Assembly (NCBI GenBank): GCA_950097015.1
Contig: CATNEN010000007.1
Span: 11,346,001-11,410,000 of the forward strand
DNA: 64,000 nucleotides
Source of the DNA: Macrostomum hystrix
Taxonomy: Eukaryota; Animalia; Platyhelminthes
Reading direction: 5' to 3'
The position numbers and the translations under genes were made by a program. Positions 1,718 to 48,446 of the stretch are shown here, one piece after another. The stretch's first letter is position 1. Each line of letters opens with the position of its first letter. The notes under the pieces were generated by a model, which was not told the DNA's origin, did not search any database, and saw only the letters and a program-made list of their open reading frames with translations.

Positions 1718-2022
1718 TAGATCAGGAACTGTCTCCATGAAATAATTTGCCTTGAACTGCGGATCCCATCACCAAAAAGTAGTTAAAAAACGATATTGTT
1801 CCGTTTGCCCATCGGCATTATCTGTAATCCAAGCTGCGAACTACTTCTTGGTCTCTGAGCTGACTGTCTTTACGGCGGTCTTCAGCGAGGTGCTCACCTC
1901 GGAAACCTTCAGCACCTGGATCAGCTTGTGTCCTGCAATTGGAAAGAGTTTTCGCACATTTACGGTTATGACCTGATTTTGAATTTCCATGGCCTTGAAT
2001 AATTGTACTTTTAAGGCCGCCA

Positions 2023-2474
2023 TCAGTCTTCATGCGAACCCTTACCGGACACGAGAGCACTGAGTGTGGGATTTCCGGCGCTATCTTTTCCGCACTCGCA
2101 GCCGCTCGCCGACTTGCCATTAATAACGCAGTCGAAGCCCTTATCGCCAATATTGCGGCATCTGCCGTCCTTCTGCGCGCACTTAGCCTCCATGAGCTCG
2201 CCGCCACTGGCGGTGCACTTGTACTTAAAGCATGAGTTAGTCCATTCCTGTCCCTGCTCGTAGCGGTTTCCGGTGCTGCGATCCACACAGACGCTGATCA
2301 CACTGCCGCCAGCGCTGCTGATGTCTCTAGCCTTGTCTCCGCTGACCACCTCGTTCTTTCCCCAGCCTGCTGAGTCCTGCACGCAGATGCAGTTTTTGTG
2401 CAGCTTTCCTCCGTAATGGCACGAGTAGCTGTCCTCGTTCAGCGCCTTGCAGGTCTTGTCAGACGCTTCACACT
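2023..2474 (-). CDS. Gene A terminal exon: Cys-rich vWC-like modules
   Basis: CVDRSTGNRYEQGQEWTNSCFKYKC motif; acceptor ctgcag| before 2474; stop after GKGSHED. Confidence 0.7.
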
Positions 2475-5400
2475 CTGCAGATTTGTTTCACGTAATGGAG
2501 CGTTATCTCAAAGTTTTTTCATCCATTTTTATTTCTTTATTTTGCTTTATCGTAAAAGCTTTATGGTGCCCCGATGACCTTGCATTTCAATAAAAACTTA
2601 CTCGGAATTCTCTTCAGTCCGGTGCTTGTGCACTCCATGACATTGCAGCCGTGGTTCCAGCGCTCGCCCTCGATGTAAACCTTCCTCGAGTCGAACGGAT
2701 CTGTGCAGCGGTTCTTGCTCTCCTTGATCTTGCAGTAGCCCCAGGATCCGGTTTCGTGCATTCGGTGGTACGAGCACCAGTACCGACCGTTGTAGGCGTC
2801 GCAGTTGTACAGCCACTTGCCCTGGTACTTGAACGGGAACACGCACTCGCGACCACTGTCCGTCAGTACTTTTTCATTAGAGGTGGCGATTGATTGATAG
2901 TGCAGGGCCTCGGCCTTCTTGCCCTTCTTGTTAACCCGACTGAACAGTCTGAAAATGAAGCAGCAAATTGAATTTAGTTAAAAAAAGGCGACAACGACTC
3001 TTCAGTTCTTGTAACAAAGCTGAGCCCTTGGATGTCCGGCGACTCGTGCGCTCAATAGTAGCACGTGCAAACAAAATGAAACTCACTTGCAGCGACACTT
3101 CCAGCTAAGCGATCCAGTGACCTGCGTGCACGGGAAGTACTCCTCAGTTGAATAGCACTGACCGTCGTAGCCAAGGCACTTTCTAGACAGGACTTCGATT
3201 CCACTGTCGCTGCACTTGAACTCAGAGCACTCTTCCTGCCAGGTGCTTCCAAGCGGCCGCAGCTGTTTGTCCTCAGTCCTGCAGTACTTAATGGTAGCAG
3301 TCTGGAGTTGACAGAGTCCGCTGATCTTGACGAAGCCATCCGGACAGTTGATCAGAGGATAGATTCTCTTGTAGATGAGCTTGAAGATGGTACTGATGTC
3401 GGTAGATCGGATGATTGTTACAAAGTGGCTGATTTCCTCTCCGGAATACAGGGCGGACCAGTCAGCTGGCTCTCTTGCGGGGGTAATCTGAACAGTGAAG
3501 AACTTTCCAGTGAACTTAAAGTCGTCTGACAGTCGTTTAATATCCGGGAGCTTGACGTCGCCCAACTTGATGTTGGAGCCAGTGATAAGGAAAACGATTG
3601 GCGTGCTTCCCTTTCTAGCCTTGGCGCGCTCTTCGTTAGCCTTCTTCATTCCCTCGAGCAGGTCTGCTTTGCCTCCAGGGAAACTTAGATCCTTGATCTT
3701 GTCATCGATTCCAGACAGATCGGCCTGGCTAAACTTAACCTCCGCATTTCCGCTTTTGCCCATAACAATGGCTGATGCGCGCACGCTGAGACCCTTCAGC
3801 TCCTTGACAGTGAACTCATTGAGCAGTCGAGTAAGGAAGTCCTTAATATCCTTTTCGGAGGCCTTGAGTTTGTCACTCCCATCGATGGTGAAGATAAAGT
3901 CAACCTTCCTTAATGAAATTCCCTTACTCTCATCTGGCACACAGCCCCTGCCGGGCTTGTGCACCCAGTTGCTGCCCAGCTTGCACTGGCATTCGTAGCC
4001 TGGCTTCTTGTTCACGCAGGTGGCTGATGCATCGCACAGCTTGCTGTCCTCCGCACATTCGTCAATGTCGACGCAGTCATTGCTGACGTAGCGAGAGCCG
4101 GAGTCGCATGTGCAGTTAAAAGAGCCGATTGTGTTGACGCACTTGGATCTGCCCTTGCAGTTGTGAGCTCCAGTTGCGCATTCGTCAATGTCCTTGCAGC
4201 CGAGACCTGTCTTGTAGGTGTAACCCTCGTCGCAAGCACACTTAAAGGAACCTATAGTGTTTACACACTTTCCAGAGCCAGCACAGGGATCTTTGCCCTT
4301 GCATTCGTCGATGTCCACACAACCAAAGTATTTATTGTACTCGAATCCAGTCTTGCAAGAGCACTTAAAGCTGCCTGGTGTATTGACACAAGTGGCGCTT
4401 CCTCCCAAGCATGGCCTCTCTTTGCATTCATCTATGTCAACGCATTTTCCCTTAGCCTTCTCAAAGTAGTAACCATTTTCACACTTCGGCTTACTTGGAC
4501 ACTTCTCCTCCTTCAGCGATACACATCCGCGAGATCTATCGTGACGGAAACCAGCGCGGCACAAGCAGATGTAGCTGCCGGGCAAGTTGACGCATGTACT
4601 GTCAGAGTGGCACGGGGACACCTTTGCAGCGCACTCGTTCACATCTCTGCAGCGTTTTCCTTGCATTCTGAATCCAGCAGTGCAGCCGGCTGTCTTCTCA
4701 AGTTCCTTGGTGATTTTCGGAATGGCAAGATAAGGTGGAACTCTTGCTGGGATGACTGTTAGACCTCCAATCGATGGTTCAGTCTTTCCTGGTTTTCTTG
4801 GTGGCAGACTGACAACAACCACGCGAACGCCTGCCTTCTTCAAAGACTCCAGCTCCCTCGTGACAGCGCTTTCAGAAGATGCCGGAACTCTGCTCTTCTT
4901 CAAAAGAATAATGTACTTTGGAACCTCCGGTCTGGCTCCTCCGACTGGCTTCATCATGACCATATTGGCAACACGAAGAGCTGCATCGAGATTATCAGCT
5001 GATCCTCCCGGCTTCTTTAGCTCTCTGACGAACGACATGAACTTGGATTTTTCCGGTCGCTCGTTGAATAGGCTTACAGTCGGGTTAGTCCTGCCAAAAA
5101 CAGCAACTGCTGGTCGAACGGAGTTGAATGAAAGTCTGTAGTTTGTCAGTAGCTTGATAATCATGTTCTTTAGCGATTCGAATTCATCCGAACTGACATC
5201 ATCAGTGCCATCCATAACGAAGGCAAGGTCAAGTGGCACGACTTTGCCACATGTTGCCTCAGGAACACATTTCTTGCCGTTTAGTACAAAGCCTTCTCTA
5301 CATACGCAGCCTTCATGGGCTGGCAAGCGGCACTTTCTTCGCCTGCCAATATCAGCGCAGGTCCTTGGACATCCACTCGAGCTTCGTCGGAAGACTGAGT

Positions 5401-8400
5401 TGGCGCCGCACTTCAGCGAACAGAAGTGGCGTCTCCTCCAACTCACCCGGAATCCCTTGGCCAGGCATGCATTGTACAAAGTTTCCAAAGACTGGCACAT
5501 GGCACGTCTGCGGTTTTTAGCTTTTCGGAACTGGCAAACATCAAACTCACAGTTCTTGTACAGCTTGGCGTAACTGACCTTGCCCGATTTCAAACAAGCA
5601 CGGAATGGTCCTTTCTTGTTTGAAATAAGGCCGCAGAATTTGTTGGATCTAACCTTTCGCTTCATCGATCCTGAGCATTTTGATGATGAAACTGGCTTGA
5701 CTTTGCATTTTGAGCTCTTGGACGAACGATCATTGACAAGATAGGATTGCCCAATTAGTACAAAGCCCTTTGAGCCCAGCTTGGATACGTCCTTTCCACT
5801 TCTGGTTCTTAAGTCGTCTTTGGGATCTCCGTTGCAATTTCCACAGATGCCCTGCACTTTGCCAGCAAATAGAGATTTCGGGAGATGCAACTCTGCTACT
5901 GACCGGCCGTTGAACTCAAGGTCCAGGCCACAGTACTTGGACTCAACGACGACATTCGTTCCACTGCTGTAAATTCGAAGCTTTTTACCATTCTTGTAGA
6001 GTGAAATGGGCAGCCGTCGAACTCGCTTGCCGTTTAGGAAAACACGGTTCTTCTGATGCAGGCGGATGGCCAGGCCATGGATTTTGATATCAACAAATCT
6101 TGTCCAGCTGACGCTTCGCTTCTTTCCCCGGACTTCATTCTTTGCTGTGACTGAGAAGTTGCACTTTGAAGACTTTCCTAGCTTCGACTTTGCAAGAAGA
6201 TACTTGCACTTGCCCATGAAGTGAATCCACTGTCCGTCAAATGTTCGGTAGTGCGGATCACCCATGGATGTGCAGGTGCAGAGCTTTCGCTTCTTTGGAT
6301 TGCAGGTGCCGCAGGATACTGGGCAGAGGAACTTCACCAGCTTTCTAGAGCAGCGCTTCCTTCTCGCCAAACTCTTGCAGACATACGTCTTGTCGTAGCA
6401 ACCCTTTAATGCTTTTCTGCAGCGGCCCTTGATGAAAATTGACTTACTGGGACACCTCTTTGGCACACAGGCGCCAAATGACTTTAAACCTCTTTTTACT
6501 GTTTTGCTTCTGTAATTCTTGGGACAGCTCCTGACGCATTGCTTGCCAAGCTTATAAGTTCCACTCTTGCAGGCAGATGAGGCACAGTACCGCCGCACTC
6601 CCCGTCTAGTTTTAAAGTAACGTCTGCGGAATCCTGAAGGACAGCGTCTGAGACAGCGTGTACCAAGCCTAAACAGCCTACCCTTGCAAGACTTCGGAGC
6701 GCAATACTTAAAGCGGTAAGACTTGGAATATCGGATAAACCTTTCAGCAAAGCCAGAGGGGCACCGCTGCACACACTGCCCGGCTGAGAAGAACCTGTCG
6801 CGGGGGCACGCGTCTCTGGCACACAGTCGGTACGGACGTCCTCCAATCTTCTTGCTCAGAACCCGATGGTTTTTAGGGCATCGGCGCTGGCATCTCCGAC
6901 GGTAGCTAACATAACCGGCCTTGCACAGTGGCATCGAGGGGACGCATGACGCTCTCCTGCGTCCTGAGACACGTCTGATTCGGCAGTTGAACCCTCTATG
7001 GCATCTCATCGTTGCACAAGGATTTTTGCTAGCGCACACAGCCACTTGGCGAACTTTACGTCCTGCTAGCGTCTTGATGACACATCTCTGGTTTCGTGAG
7101 CAAGTGACCTTTGAGCAAAGATTGCGGCGACATACGGCATAGCTTCTCATGAACTTGGACTTCCTGTATCTGAATCTAAAGCTGTACACCTTCTTCTCGT
7201 GCGAGCTTGGGCAGCTCTTGACACACCGGCCACCGAATCGAGCCATAGGATACTTGCATAGCTTTCTAGTGCACAGTCTCACGCTATAGGCGAGTCTGCG
7301 CCTCTTGAGGATTCTGAAGCGCCTTGTGGACCTTCTGATGTATCCGCGAGGACAGCTACGGACGCACCTATGCTTGTAGCGATAGGTTCCGGCCTTGCAG
7401 TCTGGAATGAAATATGAAAAGTAGTTAAATTAAATTAATTAAATTGAATTAAATTAAACACTCCAGAAAAAAAATAAAGAATTTTACTCTTACATCTCGG
7501 AACGCAGATAGCCTTGCGTACAGTTCGACGGACAGCTCGCCTTCCAGACCTGAATACCATGGTTCGACGGTTGATTACGCACCTCTTTGACTTGCTGCAG
7601 CGGACGCGGCGACAGAGGATTGTTGACAGTGTTGGTAAACAAAATCCGAGCTTCCGGCCCCGAACAATTCTTGACCGGTTGTAGTAGCCCGATGGGCACC
7701 GACGGAAGCAGCGACCAAAGGCCAGAGCTCTTGGGTATCGGCATGTCTTCTGGCGCACTGAAACAAAAAATGTGTGCAATCGACTGGCGAACGAAATCCT
7801 TCTTTTTTAGTAGGCTAAAACTAAATACGAGGCTTACCTGGTCTGCAGACACCGGTCAGCTTGAAGGATTTGCCCTTTGCTGTTCTCTTTAGGCGGTACA
7901 CCTTCTGGTAGCCAGGAGAGCATTCTGCAATTAGAAAGATAACACATGCCTTATTCTATGCTTTATTTCGCTTCGATTCGCCAAGTTAGCGAGTCTACAC
8001 ACTTCTCTTAGCACAGCTGGTGGCAGAAACGAGCTTTCTCAATCGCCTAGAATAGACTCGGTAGGTTCGCTTCTTGAAGCCACTCGGGCACCGCGAGATG
8101 CAGGCGCCTCTGAATGAAAATCGGCCTCTAGGGCACTCTGCAAGGTAAGTAGGTAAAACTATAGGGCCACTGCATTTACTCGTACATCACATTTAGATCT
8201 CATCACGCATGGCAAAAGCCAAACCTTTCTTGCAGAGCTTGATGCGACCAAATCTTAGTGAGAAGTAGCCTCTTGAGCAGCGGCTGACGCACTTGTCTCT
8301 GAGAGCGAACTTTCTGCCGCATTCTGAGATTTTGCATCAGATTCCATATTAAATACTTTAAACTGAAAAGTAATCCTATAACTTAACCACTAGCTGAAAC

Positions 8401-11400
8401 TTTAGAAGACTCACTTGGTCTGCAAGTGCGGATAACCTTCTTTGCTCTTCTGACCAGTATTGTCCTCATTCCTCTTGGACACTGCTTGCGGCATTTAGCG
8501 CGGAACAGGAACAGTCCCTTCGCGCAATTCTTCCCTGCTCTCTTGCACAGTCTAAGCACTCTGCGCACCCTTCTGCCGCCTCTGCGGAAGTGGACTACAC
8601 GGTCACGCAGCACAAATCCTCTGCGGCAGGGCTTGCTAGCACTGACACATCTGGATCTGTAGCGAGATCTTCGGGTCATGCGGCTCCATGATCGTCGGTA
8701 AACGATAAGCTGTCCCTTCTTGCATCTCTTAACCGGCCGGCAGTATCGAATGGCTGCATTTCTAGCCCTCTTGTAGACTCGGCCAGTGAAGTTCTTCGGG
8801 CATTTCTTTACACAACGCCTTTTAAACCGGAATGTTCCTTTGCTGCACCGCAAAGGCAGTTGCCTACAGCGTCCGCCTCTAGTCTTGTAGCCGCTGGGAC
8901 ACCGCTTGACGCATCGCCTGCGGAACCGGAGTAGACCGCTGGCGCACTTCTTACTGGCTTCCTTGAAGACACAGCGACCTCTTCGGGCCCGATATCCTTT
9001 AGGACATGACTTCCTGCACGTAATTCCCAGGCGGTAGCTACCCTTCGGACACCGAGTAGGCTTGCAGGATCTCAGCGATCTGACAGCAGTGTAGGTCCGC
9101 GGACAGACTTTAACACAAGATCTTTCTCCATTGGACCTGATTAGCAGCAGCTGACCAGATGGACAGAGGCGAGCTGGAAGGGAATATCCATGCAGATTAT
9201 TAAATTAACGTTTAATATCGAATCATAGATCAGGTAAAATGCTTACGGGTTGGAACGCATGATCCTCGGATATTGTAAGTGCCAGACGGACAGCGGGTTA
9301 CAATGCAGACTCCTCTGTACATCTTTCCACTTCGGCAAATCGTACTTCGTGTACAGCTTCGTCTCTTCTTTTCAAAGCCAAGAGGGCACGTTTTGAGGCA
9401 GAGCCTTCTGAATCTAAGCAGACCCTTCTTGCAGTGCTTTATTCCTGAACAGATTTTAAAATATGAGCTCAGTCTAGAATCATATTCGTCGAGCGTACCC
9501 TCGTTCATAAATGCAACAAACAGAGCACCGGCCAGGTCAAAACAATATTAGCCATCAAAGACTCAGTGCTCTTATCACTTACTGATGCACGATCGTCTCG
9601 CAAAGCTGCGGTAATGTCCAGGCGGGCACTTCACCAGGCACATCTTTCCGTAAGCAAATCGGCCTAATCGGCATTTGCTTGTCTCTAAATAAATAAGAAT
9701 GCAAATTTAGAAAAGTGCTTTTTAAAAGCCTAAGACTAAATTGAAGATGGAATTCTGCAGCTCGACTCACTGAAACAGTACGATCCACGTCGACTCGTTC
9801 CAGATGGACAGCCCTTCATGCAGGTGCCTCGGTACCTGAATGTTCCCTTCCGGCATGCGGAATAAGCGCACCGGCTGCCTCGCTTGGTAAATCCGGCCGG
9901 ACAAGTCCTTAAGCACAGCGCGCGACCCAGCTTCACGTAGCCCGCTGGGCAACTGACGGACACTCTCCGGCAGGCTCGACGAATTCCAATGTAGCCAACG
10001 GGGCACTTCGCCACACAGGACCGGCCGATACGGAACTTATTCAAGCAGTATCCTCTAATGCATCTCTGTTTGCGGAATCCGACTCTAATGAAGCCCTTCT
10101 TGCAGACCTTGAGGCAGTACCAGCGGCGTCTTCGGGTGCCGCTGGGGCATCTGGACTTACAAGAACCAGCGTAATAGACCTGACCGCGCCTGCAACTGCG
10201 CTTTCCTGTGTTTTTGAACATGAATACGATAATTTATTAAAAATATAATGAGTGTCGTGTGACAATATACTTAAATTTTAATCAGAACTTACTTATGCAA
10301 ACAATTCGGCCTCTTCGAATGCTCAGTCTTGCCTTTGAGCCACTTGGGCAGCGAGCTCCTGCAACCGATTGTTTTTAATCATAAAGTATTTTTGGCAGTT
10401 CAAGACGTGTATTTTTTAGAATTTTGTTTGAAAGCATTAAATTAGGCTACTTAAAAAAGCAACCTTCTCGAATGATTTATCTCTAACTTACTGATGCATC
10501 GCCGTCCTTTGGCGTACGTGTGCTTCGGGCACCTCCTTCGGCATCTTCTGCCATAGGCGAATCCTGATCTACAGTAGATTCTACGGCCTAAAAATTTGTA
10601 TAGAATGGTACAATTAAATGCAGAAATGAAGCGCGTGCAAACGGAATGGCCAACAACAGCAATAAGCTGCCTAGCTTACGGTAGCAATTATTGCCTCTGC
10701 GGAATGAATTTCTTGGACACTCTGAAAGTGCAAATGATACTTTTTTCGTATTAAATGAGCGATTGTTGGTAATTCAAGTTTTCAGAGTTTTCAGAGTAGT
10801 TTTGCGAGCTAATGTTTCTGAGCCGCTATGATGCTTACGTGTGCATCGACGACCAACCGCAATGTATTTTCTCGGGCAGCTCTTCACACATCTTGTCCTG
10901 TACATGAATGCTGGACAAGTCTTAACAACTAAAACGGCAGAAAAAAGTGTTTTAATTCGTACTAAGTTTTAGAATAAAGAATGCTTGTAAAGCCTGCGCA
11001 GCGTGCGCGACAACTTACGCTTGCATGATCGACTCGACGAACGCCTTGTGCCACTGGGGCATTTGCGCCAGCAGCGGTTGTTGAACAGGAACGTTCCAGA
11101 CTTGCAAACCCTGTTGAACTCTGCAACCCGTTTACAATCGTTAATGAAGCCTTGAAAAATAATGTATTGGAAAACTCAAGTATTAGCATTAGAAAAATAA
11201 CTCACTGATGCATCTAGGTCCCCGCTTAGTCTTGATCATCGTAAAAGTACGCGGGCAAACTCTGTAGAATTTGACGCATGTCCTTCCTCGGCGACGATAT
11301 CCACTTGGACAAACTTCTGGAAGCAAGTTGAAGTTTATAATAAAGTTTTAGTAAAATCTTTTTTATGTTATAATGAAACTATGAAATATTTTTTAACTTA

Positions 11401-33197: not shown

Positions 33198-33360
33198 CTT
33201 GATACCTACAAAGCGCAGGATATCGCAGTAAATTGTTGGCTCGGAGCAGTCTGACACAAAAAATATATTTCAGGCAGACAAGTTGCCACACTTACCGATA
33301 CGTCTTCAGTGGCGCTCAGATAATCAACTGGATTCACTGTAGCAAGCACCGAACGGTGCT

Positions 33361-33437
33361 GTATTTATCGGCTCTCACACGAGGCGGGTTTCACGGTGGG
33401 AGGCGAGCAGTTGACTTCGCTGCCCAGGTGGGGAGCG
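33361..33437 (-). promoter_or_regulatory. Gene A core promoter: TATA-like element plus conserved CGCTCCCCACCTG motif
   Basis: ATAAAT at 33368-33363. The 13-mer at 33425-33437 recurs at the same spacing in gene B. Confidence 0.6.
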
Positions 33438-34660: not shown

Positions 34661-34990
34661 TAATAATAATAATAAGAATGTGGACGATGGCACATCATTT
34701 GGTGACAGTAGCCCCGCAGCCAGCAAGGAGGCAATTCTGCCCATTTCGCTGACTCCTGAGCACACACACACATATACCGTACGCAGGCACACACTCACAC
34801 AGGTGTGTACATCTGCCCTGACTTTATCATCGTCAGGCAGCGTACACTTCACTGTGCCTTCGAGGTAGGCCCTCAAAGGCGTAAATTGCATGACAAGCTG
34901 CGCCTTAAATGAATGTAGTCTCCCCACGGAATTGAGCTTAGGGACCTTGGTGCGAGAGGCAAACGCCTTAGACCGCTCTGCCACTGACCC
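34661..34990 (-). mobile_element. tRNA-derived SINE copy
   Basis: Head TGGCAGAGCGG...GCTCAATTCC (A/B-box-like), body GTGTGAGTGTGTGCCTGCGTACGGTAT shared with three other loci, (ATT)n tail. Confidence 0.75.
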
Positions 34991-36645: not shown

Positions 36646-36687
36646 TTTATTGAACTTTACTGCGTCAACGAGGATTCGACCTTTATT
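36646..36687 (-). terminator. Putative polyadenylation signals of gene B
   Basis: Two minus-strand AATAAA (36687-36682, 36651-36646) downstream of the stop at 36818. Confidence 0.5.
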
Positions 36688-36817
36688 TGTAGCTTCAACA
36701 CAAGACTCAGTCATCAGAGTACCACCGCAGGCGGTCCCCGTAAAGCAGAGAGAAAATAATCCAACACCCGCTTAAAAGTTCAGTTTTGGAGTAAAAAGTC
36801 CCTTTCGGGTATTCCGC

Positions 36818-39800: not shown

Positions 39801-42800
39801 CTTGCGTCTGATTGAACGGAACTTGCGTCCAGTCTTGGTCAGGGTGCGCCTGACAATACACCGGGAGCCTCTTGCACAACGCTTTCTGGAGCACAAGACT
39901 GAAATCCAAAATATTAGCATCATTTTTTGGGAGGCCTGTGGGCACTCGCACATCATTTGGTAACAGCCGACCCGCAGCAAGCGAGAAGGCAACTGTACCA
40001 ATTATGCTTGCTCCTGAGCACACACGCACACAGATACCGTACGCAGGCACACACTCACCCATATGACTTTCTCTTCGTCAGGCATTGTACAATCTCACTG
40101 TGCCTTGGAGGTTGGAGGCACGACAAGCCCCCAAGCTTTCTCTCCACGGCTGCGCACCAAATAGTTGTGGCCTCGCCGCGGAATCGAGCTCAGGGACTTT
40201 GGTGCGAGAGGCAAACGCGTTAATCACTATGCCACTCCCCTTAAATCCGAAAGTCGCAACGTAATGTCTGAGATGACACTCTGATAGCATCTTAGACTAA
40301 AATGAAAAAATCCCCATCAATTAATATACCTTTAGGTCTGACGCATCTGGCGACAAAACGTCGGCTGCGACGAGACAGTCGTTGGGCGACACACACGCGT
40401 CCTCTGCGGCATCTCCTGTTTTGGCACACACCTGAAAACCATATTTTGTATATATCGGATTAGTGTTAGAAAGCAAAACCATATGAGCTTCCGATAAGTA
40501 AAATGCATAAGCTGACTTACTCCTACGCCGCCGTCGGACACATCGGGCCTTTAGACCAGTCGCTCGTCTTAGTCGACGCTGTAGGAATGCTGTGGAGCGT
40601 CTGTATCTCCTACTCAGCTTAGCAAGGTAAAGTCTGTGCCTTCGGACCCTCTGGTCCCTCTGCCTTCTCTCTGCTGCAGTGGGGGTGGTCGACTTGCATC
40701 GGTAGTTGATCTCCATGTACTTAAAAGTTCCGACGCAGGGATCACCGAAGAAGGAGTTGCTTGCCAGCACTGAACACGACGCTTTACCCTGGCATGCTTT
40801 TCTGACCAAGCTGTCAGCGTTTCCAGATCGGCAGCTGATCGAGTGGATTGGTCCGTTCTTGCACAAGCTGTTGGTTGTACGGCCGTAGAGGGCAGACAGC
40901 ACTTCGATTGAGGACCCGGAAGTGCATCTCAGAGTGGAAGATCCATGCTCACATGAGCGAGCCAGGTGGGTGCCTGTTTGAATTAAAATACTCAACGTTC
41001 AAAAACGACTGCGTCAGAATGACAAGTCAGAAGGGTGGTTCGAAGCCGAACTCACCACTGTATCTTGTAGTTCTTCTAGCAAAAGCGCTAAGGTAGGCAT
41101 TGATGCGCTTGACGGATGCAGCCCTGCGCCTGTTGTAAGTCGCTGTAACTTTGGCCAGCAGTCGGTTGTATCGCCTGGAAGCTCTCAGCCTCTGGGATCG
41201 AGAGAAGCGGTATCGAGCAACACAGCGCCTGTTGCGGCCGCAGCGGGCAACCTCGCATGGGGCTGCGTATGGCAGAGAATCAATGATTTTACACGGCAAT
41301 GAGAATCAAGGGCATAGACTTCCATGTACACATATATTCCATGCACTAAGAATTCTAGATTTACGCTTACACTTGATTGCTTTGCACCTGGCGGTTCGGA
41401 CATTTCTGATCGCAGCGCCAACCCGAAGCCTGGTGTTAGTAACAACACAACGCTGACCTCGCTTGCAGACTGCCTTGCCACACAGTCCTGTGGAATGTTT
41501 TCAATGTTTTTCATGTGAAACGAAAATAAAATGAAATAACTGCGATGTCTATCATTCTATATGTAATTTTAGTTCGAAATTTACAACTTACGTCGTGGCT
41601 TTCGGACGCAGGTTGGACGATAGGCCAACTTGCCGATGAATCTCAGCTTTCTCAGTGCGCAGCGGCGTCGTCTGCCACACCTGACTCGCTTGCAGATTGC
41701 TGAATGAATTGTTTGGGTATAGATATTAATTGAAGTATTATTCAAGTTAAAATTTAATTGAAGTGTAGTATATAATAATAACGCATACCTGAACTAGCGG
41801 TGGCGAAAGCGCAGCGACCAGTTGTAGAGTGATACTTGTTGAAAATCCTCAGGATCCTAGCCTGCCTTCGTGAGTAATTCTTGGCCAGTCGGGCCAGCTG
41901 AGCCTGGAGGCGCTGCTGTCTGAGCGATCGCTCCTTAAGCATTGCTGGAGTGGGGTTGAATGTCTTGCATCGGTAGCTGATCTTCATGTACTTGTACGTG
42001 CCGACGCAGGGGTCACCAAAGACGGAGTTGCTGCTGCTGATTCTGCATGACTGTCTACCCTGGCACGAGCTTCTCACTCGGGAGGTTGCCGATGCCGCTG
42101 AGCAGTGTGTCGTTTTGATAGATTTGCTTGGACATTCAATCTTGTTGGAGCGGCCATAGAAACCAGACAGAATTTCGATTGTGTAACCATTCGGGCAGCT
42201 GATGGAAACAGTGGAGTGCTCACAAGCATGTTTGTTGCTTCTGCCTGCAAGTGTATTACTCTGCGAGTTAGTTTACTTCACAGACTTGTTTCATATCAGA
42301 CCTAATAGTAATCGATCAGAAAATAGGACTTACCCGTGTAGGATGCGACAGGTTTTCTTAGGAACGCGTCAAATTCAGCCTGGGCCTTTGCCCTCTTAGC
42401 CCTGTACTGATTCAGAGCGCTGGCTGAACGACTTCTGTACGCCTTGGCTGCAGCTGCCCTTACTCGGGCCGAATAGCGGTAGCGGCGGAAGCAGGAAGTG
42501 CCACGACCGCAACGGAACTTGCCGCACTTGGCCAATTTTCTGTTTCTTCTGTTAGCTGAGAACATTAAAATACGAGCGGAGAATGTAAATTGAAGTGCTT
42601 AGTGTCAAGCGGCCTATTTATATACAAAAAAATTATTTTGCTTATATTATCTACGGCTCGTACTTCTAAAAACATTACTCACCTCGTCTTCTGGCGAATC
42701 CCCTTCTAGAATTGCGCCTTCGATTCTTTAGAGCTCTTCTTGCTCTTCTCAAAGCTCGTCTAATGCGCCTGGAAACCCGTCCTGATTTCTTCGAAGATCT

Positions 42801-45800
42801 TCTCCTTGTCACGCGTCTCCTCTGAGTACCTCGTCGCCTTCTAATAACAAGTCTCCTGATGGAACGCCTTCTACGTCCGAAGAAGCGCCTGGCCTTTCTG
42901 GAGCCTCGTCTAACGCGTCTTGAGAATCGTCTGGCCCGCTTGATAGCTCGTCGGCTTCCGATCACAAGTCTCCTTCTGATGGAACGCCTTCTACGTCCGA
43001 AGAAGCGCCTGGCCTTTCGGGAGCCTCGTCTAACGCGTCTTGAGAATCGTCTGGCCCGCTTGATAGCTCGTCGGCTTCCGATCACAAGTCTCCTTCTGAT
43101 GGAACGCCTTCTACGTCCGAAGAAGCGCCTGGCCTTTCGGGAGCCTCGTCTAACGCGTCTTGAGAATCGTCTGGCCCGCTTGATAGCTCGTCGGCTTCCG
43201 ATCACAAGTCTCCTTCTGATGGAACGCCTTCTACGTCCGAAGAAGCGCCTGGCCTTTCGGGAGCCTCGTCTAACGCGTCTTGAGAATCGTCTGGCCCGCT
43301 TGATAGCTCGTCGGCTTCTGATCGCAAGTCTCCTTCTGATGGAACGCCTTCTACGTCCGAAGAAGCGCCTGGCCTTTCGGGAGCCTCGTCTAACGCGTCT
43401 TGAGAATCGTCTGGCCCGCTTGATAGCTCGTCGGCTTCCGATCACAAGTCTCCTTCTGATGGAACGCCTTCTACGTCCGAAGAAGCGCCTGGCCTTTCGG
43501 GAGCCTCGTCTAACGCGTCTTGAGAATCGTCTGGCCCGCTTGATAGCTCGTCGGCTTCCGATCACAAGTCTCCTTCTGATGGAACGCCTTCTACGTCCGA
43601 AGAAGCGCCTGGCCTTTCGGGAGCCTCGTCTAACGCGTCTTGAGAATCGTCTGGCCCGCTTGATAGCTCGTCGGCTTCTGATCGCAAGTCTCCTTCTGAT
43701 GGAACGCCTTCTACGTCCGAAGAAGCGCCTGGCCTTTCGGGAGCCTCGTCTAACGCGTCTTGAGAATCGTCTGGCCCGCTTGATAGCTCGTCGGCTTCCG
43801 ATCACAAGTCTCCTTCTGATGGAACGCCTTCTACGTCCGAAGAAGCGCCTGGCCTTTCGGGAGCCTCGTCTAACGCGTCTTGAGAATCGTCTGGCCCGCT
43901 TGATAGCTCGTCGGCTTCCGATCACAAGTCTCCTTCTGATGGAACGCCTTCTACGTCCGAAGAAGCGCCTAGCCTTTCGGGAGCCTCGTCTAACGCGTCT
44001 TGAGAATCGTCTGGCCCGCTTGATAGCTCGTCGGCTTCCGATCACAAGTCTCCTTCTGATGGAACGCCTTCTACGTCCGAAGAAGCGCCTGGCCTTTCGG
44101 GAGCCTCGTCTAACGCGTCTTGAGAATCGTCTGGCCCGCTTGATAGCTCGTCGGCTTCCGATCACAAGTCTCCTTCTGATGGAACGCCTTCTACGTCCGA
44201 AGAAGCGCCTGGCCTTTCGGGAGCCTCGTCTAACGCGTCTTGAGAATCGTCTGGCCCGCTTGATAGCTCGTCGGCTTCCGATCACAAGTCTCCTTCTGAT
44301 GGAACGCCTTCTACGTCCGAAGAAGCGCCTGGCCTTTCGGGAGCCTCGTCTAACGCGTCTTGAGAATCGTCTGGCAAGCTTGATAGCTCGTCGGCTTCTG
44401 GTCGCAAGTCTCCTTCTGATGGAACGCCTTCTACGTCCGAAGAAGCGCCTGGCCTTTCGGGAGCCTCGTCTAACGCGTCTTGAGAATCGTCTGGCAAGCT
44501 TGATAGCTCGTCGGCTTCTGGTCGCAAGTCTCCTTCTGATGGAACGCCTTCTACGTCCGAAGAAGCGCCTGGCCTTTCGGGAGCCTCGTCTAACACGTCT
44601 TGAGAATCGTCTGGCCCGCTTGATAGCTCGTCGGCTTCCGATCACAAGTCTCCTTCTGATGGAACGCCTTCTACGTCCGAAGAAGCGCCTGGCCTTTCGG
44701 GAGCCTCGTCTAACGCGTCTTGAGAATCGTCTGGCAAGCTTGATAGCTCGTCGGCTTCTGGTCGCAAGTCTCCTTCTGATGGAACGCCTTCTACGTCCGA
44801 AGAAGCGCCTGGCCTTTCGGGAGCCTCGTCTAACGCGTCTTGAGAATCGTCTGGCAAGCTTGATAGCTCGTCGGCTTCTGGTCGCAAGTCTCCTTCTGAT
44901 GGAACGCCTTCTACGTCCGAAGAAGCGCCTGGCCTTTCGGGAGCCTCGTCTAACACGTCTTGAGAATCGTCTGGCCCGCTTGATAGCTCGTCGGCTTCTG
45001 ATCGCAAGTCTCCTTCTGATTGAAAGCCTTCTACGTCCGAAGAAGCGCCTGGCCTTTCGGGAGCCTCGTCTAACACGTCTTGAGAATCGTCTGGCCCGCT
45101 TGATAGCTCGTCGGCTTCTGATCGCAAGTCTCCTTCCGATTGAACGCCTTCTACGTCCGAAGAAGCGCCTGGCCTTTCGGGAGCCTCGTCTAACGCGTCT
45201 TGAGAATCGTCTGGCCCGCTTGATAGCTCGTCGGCTTCCGATCACAAGTCTCCTTCTGATGGAACGCCTTCTACGTCCGAAGAAGCGCCTGGCCTTTCGG
45301 GAGCCTCGTCTAACGCGTCTTGAGAATCGTCTGGCCCGCTTGATAGCTCGTCGGCTTCCGATCACAAGTCTCCTTCTGATGGAACGCCTTCTACGTCCGA
45401 AGAAGCGCCTGGCCTTTCGGGAGCCTCGTCTAACGCGTCTTGAGAATCGTCTGGCAAGCTTGATAGCTCGTCGGCTTCTGGTCGCAAGTCTCCTTCTGAT
45501 GGAACGCCTTCTACGTCCGAAGAAGCGCCTGGCCTTTCGGGAGCCTCGTCTAACGCGTCTTGAGAATCGTCTGGCAAGCTTGATAGCTCGTCGGCTTCTG
45601 GTCGCAAGTCTCCTTCTGATGGAACGCCTTCTACGTCCGAAGAAGCGCCTGGCCTTTCGGGAGCCTCGTCTAACACGTCTTGAGAATCGTCTGGCCCGCT
45701 TGATAGCTCGTCGGCTTCCGATCACAAGTCTCCTTCTGATGGAACGCCTTCTACGTCCGAAGAAGCGCCTGGCCTTTCGGGAGCCTCGTCTAACGCGTCT

Positions 45801-48209
45801 TGAGAATCGTCTGGCAAGCTTGATAGCTCGTCGGCTTCTGGTCGCAAGTCTCCTTCTGATGGAACGCCTTCTACGTCCGAAGAAGCGCCTGGCCTTTCGG
45901 GAGCCTCGTCTAACGCGTCTTGAGAATCGTCTGGCAAGCTTGATAGCTCGTCGGCTTCTGGTCGCAAGTCTTCTTCTGATGGAACGCCTTCTACGTCCGA
46001 AGAAGCGCCTGGCCTTTCGGGAGCCTCGTCTAACACGTCTTGAGAATCGTCTGGCCCGCTTGATAGCTCGTCGGCTTCTGATCGCAAGTCTCCTTCTGAT
46101 TGAAAGCCTTCTACGTCCGAAGAAGCGCCTGGCCTTTCGGGAGCCTCGTCTAACACGTCTTGAGAATCGTCTGGCCCGCTTGATAGCTCGTCGGCTTCTG
46201 ATCGCAAGTCTCCTTCCGATTGAACGCCTTCTACGTCCGAAGAAGCGCCTGGCCTTTCGGGAGCCTCGTCTAACGCGTCTTGAGAATCGTCTGGCCCGCT
46301 TGATAGCTCGTCGTACACTGCGCCGTCTTCTGGACACACAGCGCTTGGATCCGCGTCGAGCCCTTCGCAATCGTCGCTTGAGAGACACAAGTCGTCTTCT
46401 GAATGTTCGGCGGGCTCGCTTCACTCGCTTGCTGACTGCCTTTCTGATCTTGGACCTCTTCTTGACCAGTCTCTTTCTTGCAGCTGTCGATTTGACTCGT
46501 CGAGAGCTGCGGCGAATAGCAGCACGGAACTTGTGGATAATTTTTACCTGTTTCTTTCGGTAGGCTCGTCCGAGCTTTGAGATTCTTCGTCTGATTCTTC
46601 TGAGTCGTCGGGCATATCGTCGAACAACACAACGCTGGCGCCTTCCGCATCGTCTTCGGCCACATCTCGGCCCTTAAAGTGTGCATTAAAGTAGACCTGA
46701 TTTTTGGAGGCTTTAATAAACTTAAGCTATTTGCTAAAACAGTTTTAGAATTTACGCGTACCTTTTAAGTCAATGAACTCCCCAACTTAATCAGAATATT
46801 GCTTTCAAGTTTTTGGGCAAATGCGATTTGCAGTCTCACCTCGTCTCCTTCTCAAACTGCGTCGTCTTCTGGACACACAGCGCCTGGATCCACGTCGAGC
46901 CCTTCGCAATCGTCGCTTGAGAGACACAAGTCGCTTTCTGAATGTTCGGCGGGCTCTCTTCACTCGCTTGCTGACAGCCTTTCTGATCTTGGACCTCTTC
47001 TTGGCCAGTCTCTTTCTTGCAGCTGTCGATTTGACTCGTCGAGAGCTGCGGCGAATCGCAACACGGAACTTGTGGCTGATCTTGACTTGTTTTCTCCTGT
47101 AGGCCCGTCCGAGTTTGGAGATTTTACGCCTGATTCTTCGAAGACGCCTAACAGACCGTCGGACGATGCATCGCTGACGCCTTCCACAACGCCTTCGTCC
47201 GCATCGAACTCCTTAAAGCAATATAGTAACGTGAAAACCTCGGCCATGTTACGAATCTTTCCAAAAAATGTGTTACAAAAAGTGACAGAATAGCTGACTA
47301 TAATGCCGCATCATTTACCTCGTCTCTTCCAAAAAAAGCGCCGCCTTCCCCAGAAGCCGCGTTTCCTTGTTGTTCTGCGTCGTCGCCTGGACACACATCG
47401 CTTAGATCCACGTCGGGCCTTGCTCAGTCGTCGCCTTAGGGACACCAGCCGCCTCCTGAATCGTTGGCGCAGCTTTCCAGACTTCTTACTGAGAGCTCTC
47501 CTGATCTTTGAGCGTCTCTTCGAGAGTCTTTTTCGAGCCGCCACTGATTTCACGCGTCGAGAGCCCCGACGAATGGCAGCGCGGAGTTTCCGGCTGACTT
47601 TGGCGTACTTCTTCCTATAAGCGCGCCCAAGCTTGTAAATTCGACGGCTGATTCGGCGGATTTTCCGGGCTGAGCGACGAACAACGCAACGCTGACGCCG
47701 TCCGCATCTTTTGCGGCCGCATTTGATGGCTAAAATTTTTAGGAGAATGGCATTAAAGTTTCAAAAGGTATGTGATTTCATAAAACTGTACTGCAGTGGG
47801 TTTCCTAGCATTCACAGTTACTTTGCACACAGATTTTGCACAGGTGGTACACTACAGGAATCTCGGAGGCTTTGTTGCGAAAATAAACTACTGGTACGGT
47901 ACTTTTACTCACACGCGGCCACGCGGCGAGCCCAGGTCTTTTTGGCGACTTTGGCCCTGATTCGCCTCGCCTTCGCCAGCTTTTGCAGACGCTTCACCGT
48001 CTTGCCCAGCTTCCTAAAGCATCGCCTGGCCCAGCGACTGAAAAATAGCGATTTAAGAAACTGACCTTAACTGCTTACTGGGAGTAGTTAGTTTATTTTC
48101 CATACAAGTCGTTTTTTACTCACTCTTTCACCCGGCGAGCGCTGCCCACATCGCTTGTGAGGGCCAGCAGCACCACCACGGAGAGTAGGAGCAGCACCGT
48201 GAGACGCAT
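36818..48209 (-). CDS. Gene B: secreted Arg-rich protein, paralog of gene A (Cys-clamp modules, 40-aa repeat, two SUEL lectins; ~16 coding exons, ~3,000 aa)
   Basis: ATG 48209 begins MRLTVLLLLSVVVLLALTSDVGSA. GT-AG exons run to TGA at 36818. The last four exons are homologous to gene A 11402-14358. Confidence 0.82.
39925..40240 (-). mobile_element. SINE copy in a gene B intron
   Basis: Homologous to 34661-34990 (GCGTTTGCCTCTCGCACCAA.GTCCCT.AGCTC.ATTCCG head and the same body). Confidence 0.75.
40521..40973 (-). CDS. Gene B SUEL lectin exon
   Basis: SCEHGSSTLRC...ALYGR...NSFFGDPCVGTFKYMEINYRC. Confidence 0.92.
41789..42244 (-). CDS. Gene B SUEL lectin exon
   Basis: ACEHSTVSISCP...GFYGR...NSVFGDPCVGTYKYMKISYRC. 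Confidence 0.92.
42856..46313 (-). repeat. Coding 120-bp tandem repeat (~29 copies) inside gene B exon 42683-46672
   Basis: Unit encodes SRRAIKRARRFSRRVRRGSRKARRFFGRRRRSIRRRLVIG; the frame is intact across the array. Confidence 0.97.
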
Positions 48210-48370
48210 CTTGAAGTCTGAAATTCAAAGCGCAATGAAACCGGGGGTCAGACATGCAGCTCGCAGCAGGGACAGACAGATTCCACGTTGCTTTCCGCTT
48301 ACCTTGCAAACGTCAGGAGACTTTGAAATCCTCCCGAACTGATGATCTCGGAGGTCTCAACCCGGCTTTC

Positions 48371-48446
48371 ATTTATAGACGATCAGCCGGAGTCGAAGGC
48401 TCCGCTGCAACCCCAACTTCTCACAATCCTCCACAGGTGGGGAGCG
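48371..48446 (-). promoter_or_regulatory. Gene B core promoter: TATAAAT plus conserved CGCTCCCCACCTG motif
   Basis: TATAAAT at 48377-48371; 13-mer at 48434-48446; 5' UTR intron at 48218-48302. Confidence 0.65.

What the first reader, a model, noticed from the sequence alone, without database searches (positions are those of the whole stretch)
2023..48209. Tandem pair of secreted polycationic giant proteins: candidate two-component glue or secretory matrix
Seen: two same-strand genes with near-identical signal peptide starts (MRLTVLLLLSV..L..LTSD.G), the same 5' UTR intron layout, a shared promoter motif, SUEL lectins and four collinear Arg-rich exons. Gene A adds vWA domains and a vWD-C8-TIL-vWA-EGF core; gene B adds a protamine-like array and stops early. 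Known: a Lys/Arg-rich region with vWD-C8-TIL-vWA-EGF is the architecture of the flatworm adhesive protein Mlig-ap1, and vWD plus galactose-binding lectin domains occur in sea star footprint protein Sfp1. Inference: A is a cross-linking scaffold and B a cationic filler, co-secreted from one gland cell type (adhesive, rhabdite, cement or mucus). I do not recognise this exact domain order as a described protein.
Basis: partly seen in the sequence, partly recalled or inferred. Interest (0 to 1): 0.88.

Follow-up and report, generated by a model that had tools for sequence, protein, structure and literature searches.

The report
Paired giant positively charged secreted proteins
A Macrostomum flatworm has two neighbouring, separately transcribed sister genes for huge, extremely positively charged secreted proteins that resemble the worm's known glue protein but are a different gene, and whose relative in M. 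lignano is expressed along the whole body rather than only in the tail glue organs.

Summary
Two minus-strand genes start with near-identical signal peptides at 48209 (B) and 33197 (A). Spliced RNA contigs confirm A's 5'UTR intron and first coding intron. They also show that B ends at its own poly(A) site near 36660, so these are two genes.

My heuristic models give 54 exons and about 6,274 aa for A (net charge about +1,500). B has 16 exons and about 3,065 aa (45% Arg+Lys), including a 29 x 40-aa arginine array. Pfam confirms the SUEL lectin, VWA, VWD, TIL and EGF_CA domains. B's SUEL exon and four Arg-rich exons are collinear with A's.

Neither gene is the glue protein ap1. This genome's ap1-type locus lies on another contig, and A lacks ap1's C-type lectin.

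The M. lignano orthologue (Mlig000911.g1) is highly expressed in head-only fragments and classed as not region-specific. That argues against tail adhesive glands and cement glands.

A scaffold-plus-polycation pair has a precedent in other flatworms (ap1 plus ap3). The best reading is a body-wide exocrine matrix, possibly rhabdites or mucus. The cell type is untested.

The parts
48434..48446 (-). Gene B upstream 13-mer CGCTCCCCACCTG (contains the E-box CACCTG). TATAAAT follows at 48377-48371.
   Evidence: Identical 13-mer at the same spacing upstream of gene A. Only 15 exact copies in the genome.
48218..48302 (-). Gene B predicted 5'UTR intron (85 nt, GTAAG..AG), ending 8 nt before the ATG.
   Evidence: Positional and sequence match to the RNA-verified intron of gene A. 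Not verified by RNA for B.
48124..48209 (-). Gene B first coding exon: signal peptide MRLTVLLLLSVVVLLALTSDVG.
46840..47729 (-). Gene B: two Cys-clamp Arg-rich module exons (47729-47319 and 47211-46840).
   Evidence: Open frames with 47-49% K+R; heuristic gene model.
42683..46672 (-). Gene B array exon, about 1,330 aa, 47% Arg and no acidic residues. Tandem array at 42830-46313: 120 nt (40 aa) x 29.1.
   Evidence: AF2 on a single sequence predicts helix, pLDDT 77. No database homologue found.
41789..42244 (-). Gene B SUEL lectin exon 1.
   Evidence: Pfam PF02140, E 1.4e-10, on the 42077-41754 frame; model.
40324..40995 (-). Gene B SUEL lectin exon 2 (open frame; true exon borders uncertain).
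   Evidence: Pfam PF02140, E 1.3e-21. 41-43% identical to A's SUEL exons.
36818..39898 (-). Gene B: four Arg-rich exons collinear with gene A (39898-39023, 38944-38021, 37913-37476, 37200-36818 including the stop).
   Evidence: tblastn E 1e-91, 9e-88, 2e-45 and 7e-35. Intron 37475-37201 seen in RNA contigs of four runs. AF2 of exon 3 gives pLDDT 92: a beta base plus a helical hairpin.
36660..36817 (-). Gene B 3'UTR, with AATAAA at 36687-36682 and the transcript end at about 36660.
   Evidence: RNA contigs of X1 and X6-X8 end at 36659-36663; poly(A) signal.
33425..33437 (-). Gene A upstream 13-mer CGCTCCCCACCTG. GATAAAT follows at 33369-33363.
33206..33295 (-). Gene A 5'UTR intron (90 nt).
   Evidence: Joint in RNA contigs of X7 and X8.
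33115..33205 (-). Gene A exon with the ATG at 33197 and the signal peptide.
31760..33028 (-). Gene A exon 3: Arg-rich, with a run of (Ala-Arg)n about 230 aa long.
   Evidence: Covered end to end by RNA contigs; intron 33114-33029 verified; translation.
29465..31542 (-). Gene A: Cys-rich furin-like repeat exons and the first VWA_4 domain.
   Evidence: Pfam VWA_4, E 1.4e-4; heuristic model.
14484..28538 (-). Gene A: about three tandem 3,390-bp units (99-100% identical). Each encodes Cys-clamp modules, a VWA_4 domain and a SUEL lectin. Copy 3 has a 1-nt T5>T4 deletion at 27460.
20457..25015 (-). Ty3/Gypsy LTR retrotransposon with 257-nt LTRs that are 100% identical. It is inserted 15-17 nt into the intron after exon 25147-25031. 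It is a passenger, not part of the protein.
11402..14358 (-). Gene A: four Arg-rich exons collinear with B (14358-13486, 13384-12440, 12265-11828, 11686-11402).
7494..11316 (-). Gene A: Arg/Lys-rich Cys-repeat (furin-like CxxCP) exons.
   Evidence: Weak Pfam Furin-like_2 matches. 75-82% identical to M. lignano P0001/P0124.
3087..7401 (-). Gene A core exon: VWD, a C8-like cysteine stretch, TIL, VWA, 5 x EGF_CA, VWA, and a Cys-rich tail.
   Evidence: Pfam. 85% identical to M. lignano BOX15_Mlig000911g1. 98-99% of sampled words held by runs X6-X9; X6-X8 proved to be spliced RNA.
1841..2948 (-). Gene A 3' exons: FN2 (2948-2602), Cys-rich (2465-2046), and the last exon 1932-1841 with TAG at 1843-1841. 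AATAAA lies at 1717.

Best explanation
Genes A and B are tandem paralogues.

Shown:
- Each has its own promoter and poly(A) site.
- Each encodes a signal peptide followed by a very large polycationic protein.
- A is about 6,270 aa and 720 kDa, with net charge about +1,500 and 409 Cys. B is about 3,065 aa and 377 kDa, with 36% Arg and 0.6% acidic residues. These figures come from heuristic gene models.

Predicted or inferred structure:
- The basic building block, usually one exon, is a small beta base with the conserved cysteines, likely disulfide-linked. It carries a long antiparallel Arg/Lys-covered helical hairpin.
- SUEL lectins and VWA domains are interspersed between these blocks.
- A then continues into a multimerising, calcium-binding tail (VWD, TIL, VWA, cbEGF, VWA, FN2).
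- B instead carries a 29-unit arginine array inside one module and stops after the shared Arg-rich exons.

Inferred function:
- Both are exported into the same exocrine secretion, made along the whole body rather than in the tail glue organs.
- The cationic helices condense with polyanionic glycans for dense granule packing, and bind anionic surfaces after release.
- The lectins hold galactose- or rhamnose-bearing glycans.
- A's VWD/TIL/VWA/EGF tail links molecules into a network, while B adds charge without cross-linking ends.
- This would be a body-wide analogue of the ap1 plus ap3 cohesive pair of flatworm glue.
For: - Two transcripts: spliced RNA contigs cover A's first exons and B's last exons. 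B's contigs stop at 36659-36663 after an AATAAA, and none bridges to A.
- Paralogy: signal peptides, promoter islands, the SUEL exon and four Arg-rich exons are collinear.
- Continuous ORFs of 54 and 16 exons exist through GT-AG introns. My model recovered B's RNA-verified intron exactly and A's exon end to within 3 nt.
- Composition and charge.
- Domains.
- Module fold: AF2 pLDDT 92, strands 11-19 and 134-142 plus helices 21-73 and 76-128. The array is helix-prone.
- Body-wide high expression of the M. lignano orthologue. Mlig000911.g1, g10 and g5 have counts of 6527/5187/5097/8482, 5291/5220/3756/7168 and 3899/3089/3064/4504 in head, +testis, +ovary and whole worm. All are classed 'Non-Specific'. 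g1 and g5 are annotated as lower in octets in both contrasts; g10 trends the same way (padj 0.06 and 0.19) (PMC7336406 supplement).
- The B/A contig depth ratio is about 4.1-4.7 in three runs. This is weak evidence; the tool warns against ranking genes by contig depth.
- Precedents: ap1's Lys/Arg regions act by charge and are blocked by heparin (PMC6410801). The ap1/ap3 split is published (PMC9229212).
Against: - There is no cell-type, protein-level or secretion evidence for this species.
- The expression pattern is borrowed from another species. I could not show which M. lignano models (g5, g10) correspond to B.
- No B orthologue or array homologue was found.
- Internal exon borders are heuristic.
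- The assembled A allele carries a same-strand LTR element in an intron and a 1-nt frameshift in one repeat copy. This allele may therefore be impaired.
- R-x-[K/R]-R sites number 71 in A and 150 in B. The proteins might be cut into peptides rather than act whole.
Confidence: 0.5

Rival explanations
1. They are components of the tail duo-gland temporary adhesive, that is, ap1/ap3-type glue proteins of the adhesive papillae.
For: KR-rich regions plus VWD-TIL-EGF resemble Mlig-ap1. Theama 'adhesion protein 1' is a database hit for the TIL/EGF part, at 36% identity over 33% of the query.
Against: - The M. lignano orthologue is as abundant in head-only fragments as in whole worms and is not classed as tail-specific. 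ap1 and ap2 are expressed exclusively in the tail.
- A separate ap1-type locus exists on C39: a KR frame, then Lectin_C, VWD, TIL-like, many EGFs, and a 5,735-aa KR frame.
- A has no C-type lectin.
- The ap1/ap2 antibody peptides are absent from the window.
Confidence: 0.04
2. They are defence or antimicrobial polyproteins. Convertases would cut B's array, and perhaps the other Arg-rich modules, into many cationic helical peptides released in surface mucus.
For: - 29 near-identical 40-aa units with 150 R-x-[K/R]-R sites in B.
- Helical propensity of the array.
- Body-wide expression of the orthologue.
- Tandem-repeat polyproteins are a common way to make antimicrobial peptides (general knowledge).
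Against: - There are no acidic spacers or pro-regions.
- 47% Arg is far above typical antimicrobial peptides.
- The array sits as an insert inside a Cys-clamped module, like the other folded hairpins.
- The related ap1 acts as an intact giant protein.
Confidence: 0.12
3. A, with B, is an extracellular-matrix or basal-lamina protein of the fibrillin/hemicentin kind, rather than a discharged gland product.
For: cbEGF, VWA, FN2 and VWD domains, with fibrillins as database hits for the EGF part. Expression of the orthologue is not region-specific.
Against: - About 4,900 aa of A and all of B are polycationic modules unknown in matrix proteins.
- Very high read counts for 5-10 kb M. lignano models suggest a consumed product.
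- Lectin-rich, mucin-like VWD-TIL architecture.
Confidence: 0.1
4. They are reproductive secretions: cement or shell gland, prostate or seminal fluid, or an egg coat.
For: In M. lignano, g1 and g5 respond to social group size, being lower in octets; g10 trends the same way. Arginine arrays recall protamines.
Against: Expression in head fragments, which lack gonads and genital glands. A signal peptide excludes a nuclear protamine role. No in situ probe in the Brand et al. table maps to these genes.
Confidence: 0.04
5. B is a functionless, decaying partial duplicate of A, and its array is a neutral expansion.
For: B lacks all of A's C-terminal domains. No orthologue of B was found in protein databases.
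Against: - An uninterrupted 3,065-aa reading path runs through 16 exons.
- B is spliced and polyadenylated, and its contig depth is higher than A's.
- Promoter islands are conserved.
- B is about equally distant from A here (46-48%) and from M. lignano A (50%), whereas the two A orthologues share 63-67%. The duplicate is therefore either old and retained, or fast-evolving.
Confidence: 0.1

Closest known systems
Mlig-ap1 (Macrostomum lignano adhesion protein 1; Wunderer et al. 2019, PMC6410801)
   Same: - A giant secreted protein of the same genus.
- Thousands of Lys/Arg-rich residues, plus VWD, a C8-like stretch, TIL and calcium-binding EGF modules.
- High cysteine content.
- ap1's VWD on C39 is 39-44% identical to A's, as close as any other VWD in this genome apart from the C38 paralogue.
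   Different: - ap1 has a C-type lectin, 7-18 EGFs, and low-complexity Gly/Arg/Lys flanks on both sides, and it is tail-specific.
- A has SUEL lectins, six VWA-type domains, FN2 and 5 EGFs.
- A's cationic part consists of Cys-clamped helical modules on the N-terminal side only.
- A's orthologue is expressed along the whole body.
- The ap1-type locus is elsewhere.
ap1 + ap3 split cohesive pair of Minona ileanae and Theama mediterranea (PMC9229212)
   Same: A two-protein division of labour: a domain-rich core protein plus a separate signal-peptide-bearing polycation of about 3,000-3,700 aa.
   Different: - ap3 is almost pure Gly/Arg/Lys(/His/Ser) low complexity and is made in adhesive glands.
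- B is Arg-dominated and Gly-poor, and keeps two SUEL lectins and Cys-clamp modules.
- B is a paralogue of its partner A.
- No sequence homology to ap3 was tested, because no ap3 sequence was at hand.
Sea star footprint protein Sfp1
   Same: It combines VWD, C8, galactose-binding (SUEL-type) lectin and EGF domains in a large cysteine-rich secreted cohesive protein (as summarised in PMC6410801).
   Different: Sfp1 has no polycationic regions and is from a different phylum. Sfp1 did not appear among the database hits. The resemblance is in domain types only.
Uncharacterised M. lignano predicted proteins PAA67297.1 (BOX15_Mlig000911g1), A0A1I8JL43 and A0A1I8I5M9 ('SUEL-type lectin domain-containing protein')
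   Same: They are true orthologues of gene A: 85% identity over the 1,070-aa core and 63-67% in the Arg-rich exons, with the same exon order.
   Different: They are automatic, partial gene models with no described function. No paper in the searched library mentions Mlig000911 in its main text.
VWD-C8-TIL multimerising proteins (gel-forming mucins, IgGFc-binding protein, zonadhesin, otogelin)
   Same: The VWD-TIL assembly is the best non-flatworm match for that part of A, at 31-38% identity. These assemblies make disulfide-linked polymers (general knowledge).
   Different: A has only one such assembly, no Pro/Thr/Ser mucin domain, and only 12 N-glycosylation sequons in about 6,270 aa. It is polycationic rather than a polyanionic glycoprotein.

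Membership tests
Flatworm adhesion protein 1 (ap1) | C-type lectin domain directly N-terminal of VWD | tested here: not met
   No Lectin_C hit in any scanned exon of A or B. Lectin_C (E 1e-6) is found instead at the C39 locus.
Flatworm adhesion protein 1 (ap1) | VWD-C8-TIL block followed by a run of EGF-like modules (7-18) | tested here: inconclusive
   VWD (E 9e-32), TIL (5e-10) and 5 EGF_CA are present. C8 is not detected by Pfam. A VWA domain is inserted between TIL and the EGFs.
Flatworm adhesion protein 1 (ap1) | Low-complexity Gly/Arg/Lys regions flanking the core on both sides | tested here: not met
   The cationic part lies only N-terminal of the core. It consists of Cys-clamped, predicted-helical modules, not GRK low complexity. 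The part C-terminal of the VWD has a net charge of only +91 over 1,351 aa.
Flatworm adhesion protein 1 (ap1) | Expression restricted to the adhesive gland cells of the tail plate | tested here: not met
   The M. lignano orthologue Mlig000911.g1 is classed 'Non-Specific', with head-fragment counts of 6,527 against 8,482 in whole worms. Not tested in this species.
Flatworm adhesion protein 1 (ap1) | Orthology: it is the genome's best counterpart of ap1 | tested here: not met
   A separate locus, C39:6866001-6896000+, has the full ap1 layout: a KR frame of at least 2,004 aa, Lectin_C, VWD, many EGFs, and a 5,735-aa KR frame.
Flatworm adhesion protein 3 (ap3) | Signal peptide followed almost only by a Gly/Arg/Lys(/His/Ser) low-complexity repeat | tested here: not met
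   B has the signal peptide and 45% Arg+Lys. It also has two SUEL lectins, 72 Cys in clamp modules and a Gly-poor 40-aa unit.
SUEL / rhamnose-binding lectin domain proteins | PF02140 domain above the gathering score | tested here: met
   70.1, 77.2 and 41.8 bits against a cut-off of 31.4. Sugar binding itself is not testable here.
Protamine-like nuclear basic proteins | Nuclear, sperm-chromatin protein without a secretory signal | tested here: not met
   The array lies in one reading path behind a classic signal peptide. The orthologue of the partner gene is expressed in gonad-free head fragments.
Gel-forming mucins | Several VWD assemblies plus long Pro/Thr/Ser O-glycosylated domains | tested here: not met
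   There is one VWD and no PTS region. The long regions are Arg/Lys-rich.

The most novel reading that the evidence does not exclude
A and B, with the C38 paralogue, are major matrix proteins of rhabdites or rhammites. These are the rod-shaped epidermal secretory bodies that define the flatworm clade Rhabditophora, and I found no report of their protein composition in the library searched. The Cys-clamped polycationic helical hairpins would pack the rods densely against polyanionic glycans, and would drive swelling into mucus on discharge.
Probability: 0.2. Interest if true: 0.8.

Novelty: new variant of a known kind. Interest (0 to 1): 0.55.

Why it matters
Charge-driven giant proteins are the working principle of the only flatworm glue understood so far.

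This locus shows that the same genus has a second system of that kind, apparently much more widely expressed. It is built from a different, well-folded module, and it is already divided into a cross-linkable scaffold and a nearly pure polycation.

If the cell type turns out to be rhabdite or mucous glands, it would give the first molecular handle on those secretions. It would also provide natural sequences for polycation-polyanion (coacervate) biomaterials.

The pair is also a clean example of how a partial tandem duplicate plus an in-module repeat expansion can create a 'filler' partner for a scaffold protein.

Tried and rejected
- Mlig-ap1/ap2 identity: the six published antibody and assay peptides are absent from all six frames of the window. 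Rejected.
- Literature: no paper in the library mentions Mlig000911 in its main text. Searches on rhabdite composition, single-cell atlases and planarian mucus gave nothing usable.
- B orthologue:
  - phmmer of a B Arg-rich exon against 1.8 billion representatives found only two M. lignano clusters. One is A-type at 54% identity, the other C38-type at 34%.
  - Two word-based searches with the array frame found nothing. Length limits and Arg-rich word saturation make these weak negatives.
- The 13-mer as a marker of co-regulated genes: most other genomic copies sit in one dispersed repeat or in a tandem repeat. None of the sites inspected showed a signal-peptide-like start within 700 nt. Rejected.
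- Foldseek of the module model against PDB returned only generic helical hairpins, E >= 0.4. The ESM Atlas gave no usable hit.
- Rfam on the whole window found no family.
- A megablast of the LTR element against the phage collection was pointless and empty.
- The joined spliced protein models were used only inside my own scripts, for length and composition. They were not sent to any search or fold tool; all searches were exon by exon, by reference.
Full report
**Organism and setting**

The window is C7:11346001-11410000 of a 220-Mb assembly. Earlier scan notes call the organism a Macrostomum flatworm. The best database hits are all Macrostomum lignano proteins, which agrees with this. Both genes lie on the minus strand.

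**Checking the observation**

- Six-frame translation finds exactly two MRLTVLLLLSV... starts, at 48209 (gene B, upstream) and 33197 (gene A).
- Pfam on single exons confirms the following:
  - SUEL lectins: three exons in A and two in B.
  - VWA_4 domains in A.
  - One large exon (7401-3087) holding VWD, TIL, VWA, five EGF_CA and a second VWA.
  - An FN2 domain further 3'.
  - C8 is not called by Pfam; only its cysteine pattern is visible.
- Tandem Repeats Finder gives a 120-nt x 29.1 array at 42830-46313 with 97% matches. It lies inside a 1,332-aa open frame with 53% Arg+Lys.
- tblastn of B's exons against A's half of the window shows the claimed collinearity:
  - The SUEL exon matches at 41-43%.
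  - The four Arg-rich exons match at 46%, 48%, 46% and 60%, with E from 1e-91 to 7e-35.

**RNA evidence**

The core exon of A is held almost completely (0.98-0.99 of sampled words) by four runs of a 2020 study. I laid contigs of three of these runs and one 2024 run on 31750-37700. The result showed:

- A's exon 31760-33028.
- The 86-nt intron 33029-33114.
- The ATG exon.
- A 90-nt 5'UTR intron ending 8 nt before the ATG.
- B's 275-nt intron 37201-37475.
- B's contigs ending at 36659-36663, 20-25 nt after an AATAAA.

No contig joins B to A. These are therefore two transcripts, and B really does stop early.

**Promoters**

Alignment of the two upstream regions shows little similarity apart from a few islands:

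- An identical 13-mer, CGCTCCCCACCTG.
- A (G/T)ATAAAT box 68/69 nt further on.
- The GGTAAG donor.
- The block CAAGATGCGTCTCAC around the start codon.

The 13-mer occurs only 15 times in the genome. Most other copies belong to one dispersed repeat or to a tandem repeat. Its presence in both promoters is therefore conserved paralogy, not chance. It does not mark a wider regulon.

The more distant paralogue on C38 keeps the TATAAAT box, the 5'UTR intron and CAAGATGCGTCTC. It does not have the 13-mer within 420 nt of the ATG.

**Gene models**

I wrote a small dynamic-programming exon chainer based on codon log-odds and GT-AG sites. It finds uninterrupted reading paths:

- B: 16 exons, 3,065 aa.
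- A: 54 exons, 6,274 aa, ending at TAG 1843-1841.

The M. lignano orthologue supports that last exon. The chainer recovered B's RNA-verified intron exactly and A's exon end to within 3 nt. Other internal borders remain heuristic.

Composition from these models:

| | Arg | Lys | Asp+Glu | Cys | Net charge |
|---|---|---|---|---|---|
| A | 19% | 8.5% | 3.6% | 409 residues | about +1,514 |
| B | 36% | 9% | 0.6% | 72 residues | about +1,369 |
| B array alone | 47% | 5.7% | none | 4 residues | about +700 |

The joined models were used only for these local counts.

**Anatomy of A**

- A 3,390-bp unit occurs about three times at 99-100% identity. Each unit holds several Cys-clamp modules, a VWA_4 domain and a SUEL lectin.
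- A Ty3/Gypsy element with identical 257-nt LTRs (20457-25015) sits 15-17 nt inside an intron, in the same orientation as the gene.
- Copy 3 of the unit has a one-base T5>T4 difference at 27460 that shifts the frame of a VWA exon. This could be real or an assembly error.

**The module**

Nearly every Arg-rich exon starts C-x4-C-x5-C-(V/I)-x-R-R and ends with A-R-C.

AlphaFold2 on an alignment of the third shared exon from A, B and the C38 paralogue gave mean pLDDT 92. The model has two strands (11-19 and 134-142) forming a base. From this base rises an antiparallel hairpin of two helices of about 53 residues each (21-73 and 76-128).

The 40-aa array is predicted helical without tertiary structure (pLDDT 77, pTM 0.22).

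Foldseek and the ESM Atlas found no specific relative.

The inserts between the clamp cysteines range from about 14 residues to B's roughly 1,300-residue array. This fits the 'expandable socket' idea noted separately on this window (s1-840586).

**Relatives**

- In M. lignano, PAA67297.1 (BOX15_Mlig000911g1, 2,079 aa) is 85% identical over the 1,070-aa core.
- A0A1I8JL43 (4,266 aa) and A0A1I8I5M9 (2,640 aa) extend the orthologue through the furin-like repeats, the four Arg-rich exons and tandem SUEL units. All are uncharacterised automatic models.
- In this genome a second A-type gene lies on C38 (about 3983528-4007000). Its core is 65% identical, and no B-like neighbour was seen. M. lignano has its counterpart, A0A1I8JAD7.
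- Exon identities:
  - A here against A in M. lignano: 63-67%.
  - A against B: 46-48%.
  - B against M. lignano A: 50%.
  - Either of these against the C38 type: 30-45%.
  - So B arose after the C38 split. It is either older than the species split or fast-evolving.
- phmmer of a B exon against 1.8 billion representative proteins returned only the two M. lignano clusters. The Arg-rich modules therefore look genus-restricted.

**Is it ap1?**

No, for four reasons:

1. ap1 is defined by a C-type lectin, then VWD-C8-TIL, then 7-18 EGFs, flanked by Gly/Arg/Lys low complexity, with tail-only expression (PMC6410801; PMC8621496).
2. This genome has exactly such a locus on C39. It holds a KR frame of at least 2,004 aa, Lectin_C (E 1e-6), VWD, many EGFs, and a 5,735-aa frame with 58% Lys+Arg.
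3. The ap1/ap2 peptides are absent from the window.
4. A's VWD is 39-44% identical to that ap1-type VWD, so the two are related at the domain level only.

**Where is it expressed?**

The only usable evidence is from M. lignano, in the re-analysed positional RNA-seq. That dataset used four nested fragments made by cutting worms at different levels (PMC7336406). Counts in head, +testis, +ovary and whole worm were:

| Model | Head | +testis | +ovary | Whole worm |
|---|---|---|---|---|
| Mlig000911.g1 | 6527 | 5187 | 5097 | 8482 |
| Mlig000911.g10 (same scaffold) | 5291 | 5220 | 3756 | 7168 |
| Mlig000911.g5 (same scaffold) | 3899 | 3089 | 3064 | 4504 |

- These are the three highest of the roughly 75 rows I read, and all three models are classed 'Non-Specific'.
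- g1 and g5 are annotated as lower in octets than in isolated or paired worms. g10 trends the same way (padj 0.06 and 0.19).
- No published in situ probe in that paper's table maps to them.
- Equal abundance in head-only pieces excludes tail adhesive glands, cement glands and gonads as the main source. The rise when the tail is added argues against head-only glands.
- This is cross-species inference.

**Most likely mechanism**

Steps shown:
- Two genes.
- Signal peptides.
- Extreme positive charge.
- Lectin, VWA, VWD, TIL and EGF content.
- Transcription and splicing.
- Conserved promoter islands.

Steps inferred:
- Both proteins enter the same exocrine granules of a body-wide gland type.
- The cationic hairpins condense with polyanionic glycans.
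- SUEL domains hold galactose- or rhamnose-bearing glycans. Many M. lignano glands are rich in galactose glycoconjugates (PMC4890501).
- A's C-terminal VWD/TIL/VWA/cbEGF part links molecules into a network.
- B adds charge without network ends.

The published precedent is the heparin-sensitive, charge-based cohesion of ap1. A second precedent is the split of that function into ap1 plus ap3 in Minona and Theama.

**Rivals**

The rivals are listed separately: defence peptides released by convertases, an extracellular-matrix protein, a reproductive secretion, and a decaying duplicate.

**Verdict**

- The 'two-component' reading is plausible and has a precedent.
- The 'adhesive' and 'cement' cell types are contradicted by the M. 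lignano data.
- The genes are a new variant of the giant Lys/Arg-rich secreted proteins already known from flatworm glue, with true but uncharacterised orthologues in M. lignano.
- The same genome holds further giants of this general kind. One, seen here, is SUEL x2 plus a 2,960-aa KR frame on C1. Another, noted by the scan on other DNA, is a Trp/Arg repeat protein (s1-361106).

Noticed in passing
window 20457-25015 (-): A Ty3/Gypsy LTR retrotransposon with a 1,311-aa open gag-PR-RT-RNaseH-INT frame and two 257-nt LTRs that are 100% identical. This indicates a very recent insertion. It sits in the same orientation as gene A, 15-17 nt after a splice donor, and could interfere with splicing or polyadenylation of this allele.
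   Followed up: partly
window 27460 (compare 19515): One-base T5>T4 difference in copy 3 of the 3,390-bp unit. It shifts the frame of a VWA-encoding exon. It may be a real mutation or a homopolymer error in the assembly.
   Followed up: partly
window 34536-35132; also about 39900-40062: A short interspersed repeat between the two genes, laid at very high summed depth (up to about 4,900) by many tiny RNA contigs at 95-99% identity. A related piece lies in the intron before B's first shared Arg-rich exon and matches many places genome-wide. No Rfam family or Pfam domain matches.
   Followed up: partly
G000:C39:6866001-6896000 (+) (L014-L016): This genome's ap1-type adhesive protein locus: a KR-rich frame of at least 2,004 aa, a C-type lectin, VWD, a TIL-like stretch, many EGFs, then a 5,735-aa open frame with 58% Lys+Arg that runs off the fetched stretch.
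   Followed up: partly
G000:C1:24436002-24447016 (-) (L012-L013): Another giant gene: two SUEL-like exons followed by a 2,960-aa open frame with 56% Lys+Arg. It continues into a further KR-rich frame.
   Followed up: no
G000:C38:3983528-4007000 (+) (L009-L011): A compact A-type paralogue with signal peptide MRLALLLFSAALC. It has the same order: Arg-rich exon, furin-like repeats, VWA_4, SUEL, four Arg-rich exons, and a 1,469-aa core exon 65% identical to A's. No B-like partner was seen upstream. One Arg-rich exon carries its own repeat expansion.
   Followed up: partly
window 31759-32907 (-) with 32213-33058 (+): The (Ala-Arg)n run in A's exon 3 leaves the opposite strand open as a 281-aa Leu/Ala-rich frame. 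Likewise, the B array leaves a 1,234-aa frame open on the plus strand (42859-46563). Both are mirror artefacts of the repeats, not genes.
   Followed up: no
window 51579-53456 (+): A 625-aa open frame with weak glycine-zipper Pfam matches. It overlaps several other long frames in a GC-rich stretch. Unexplained.
   Followed up: no
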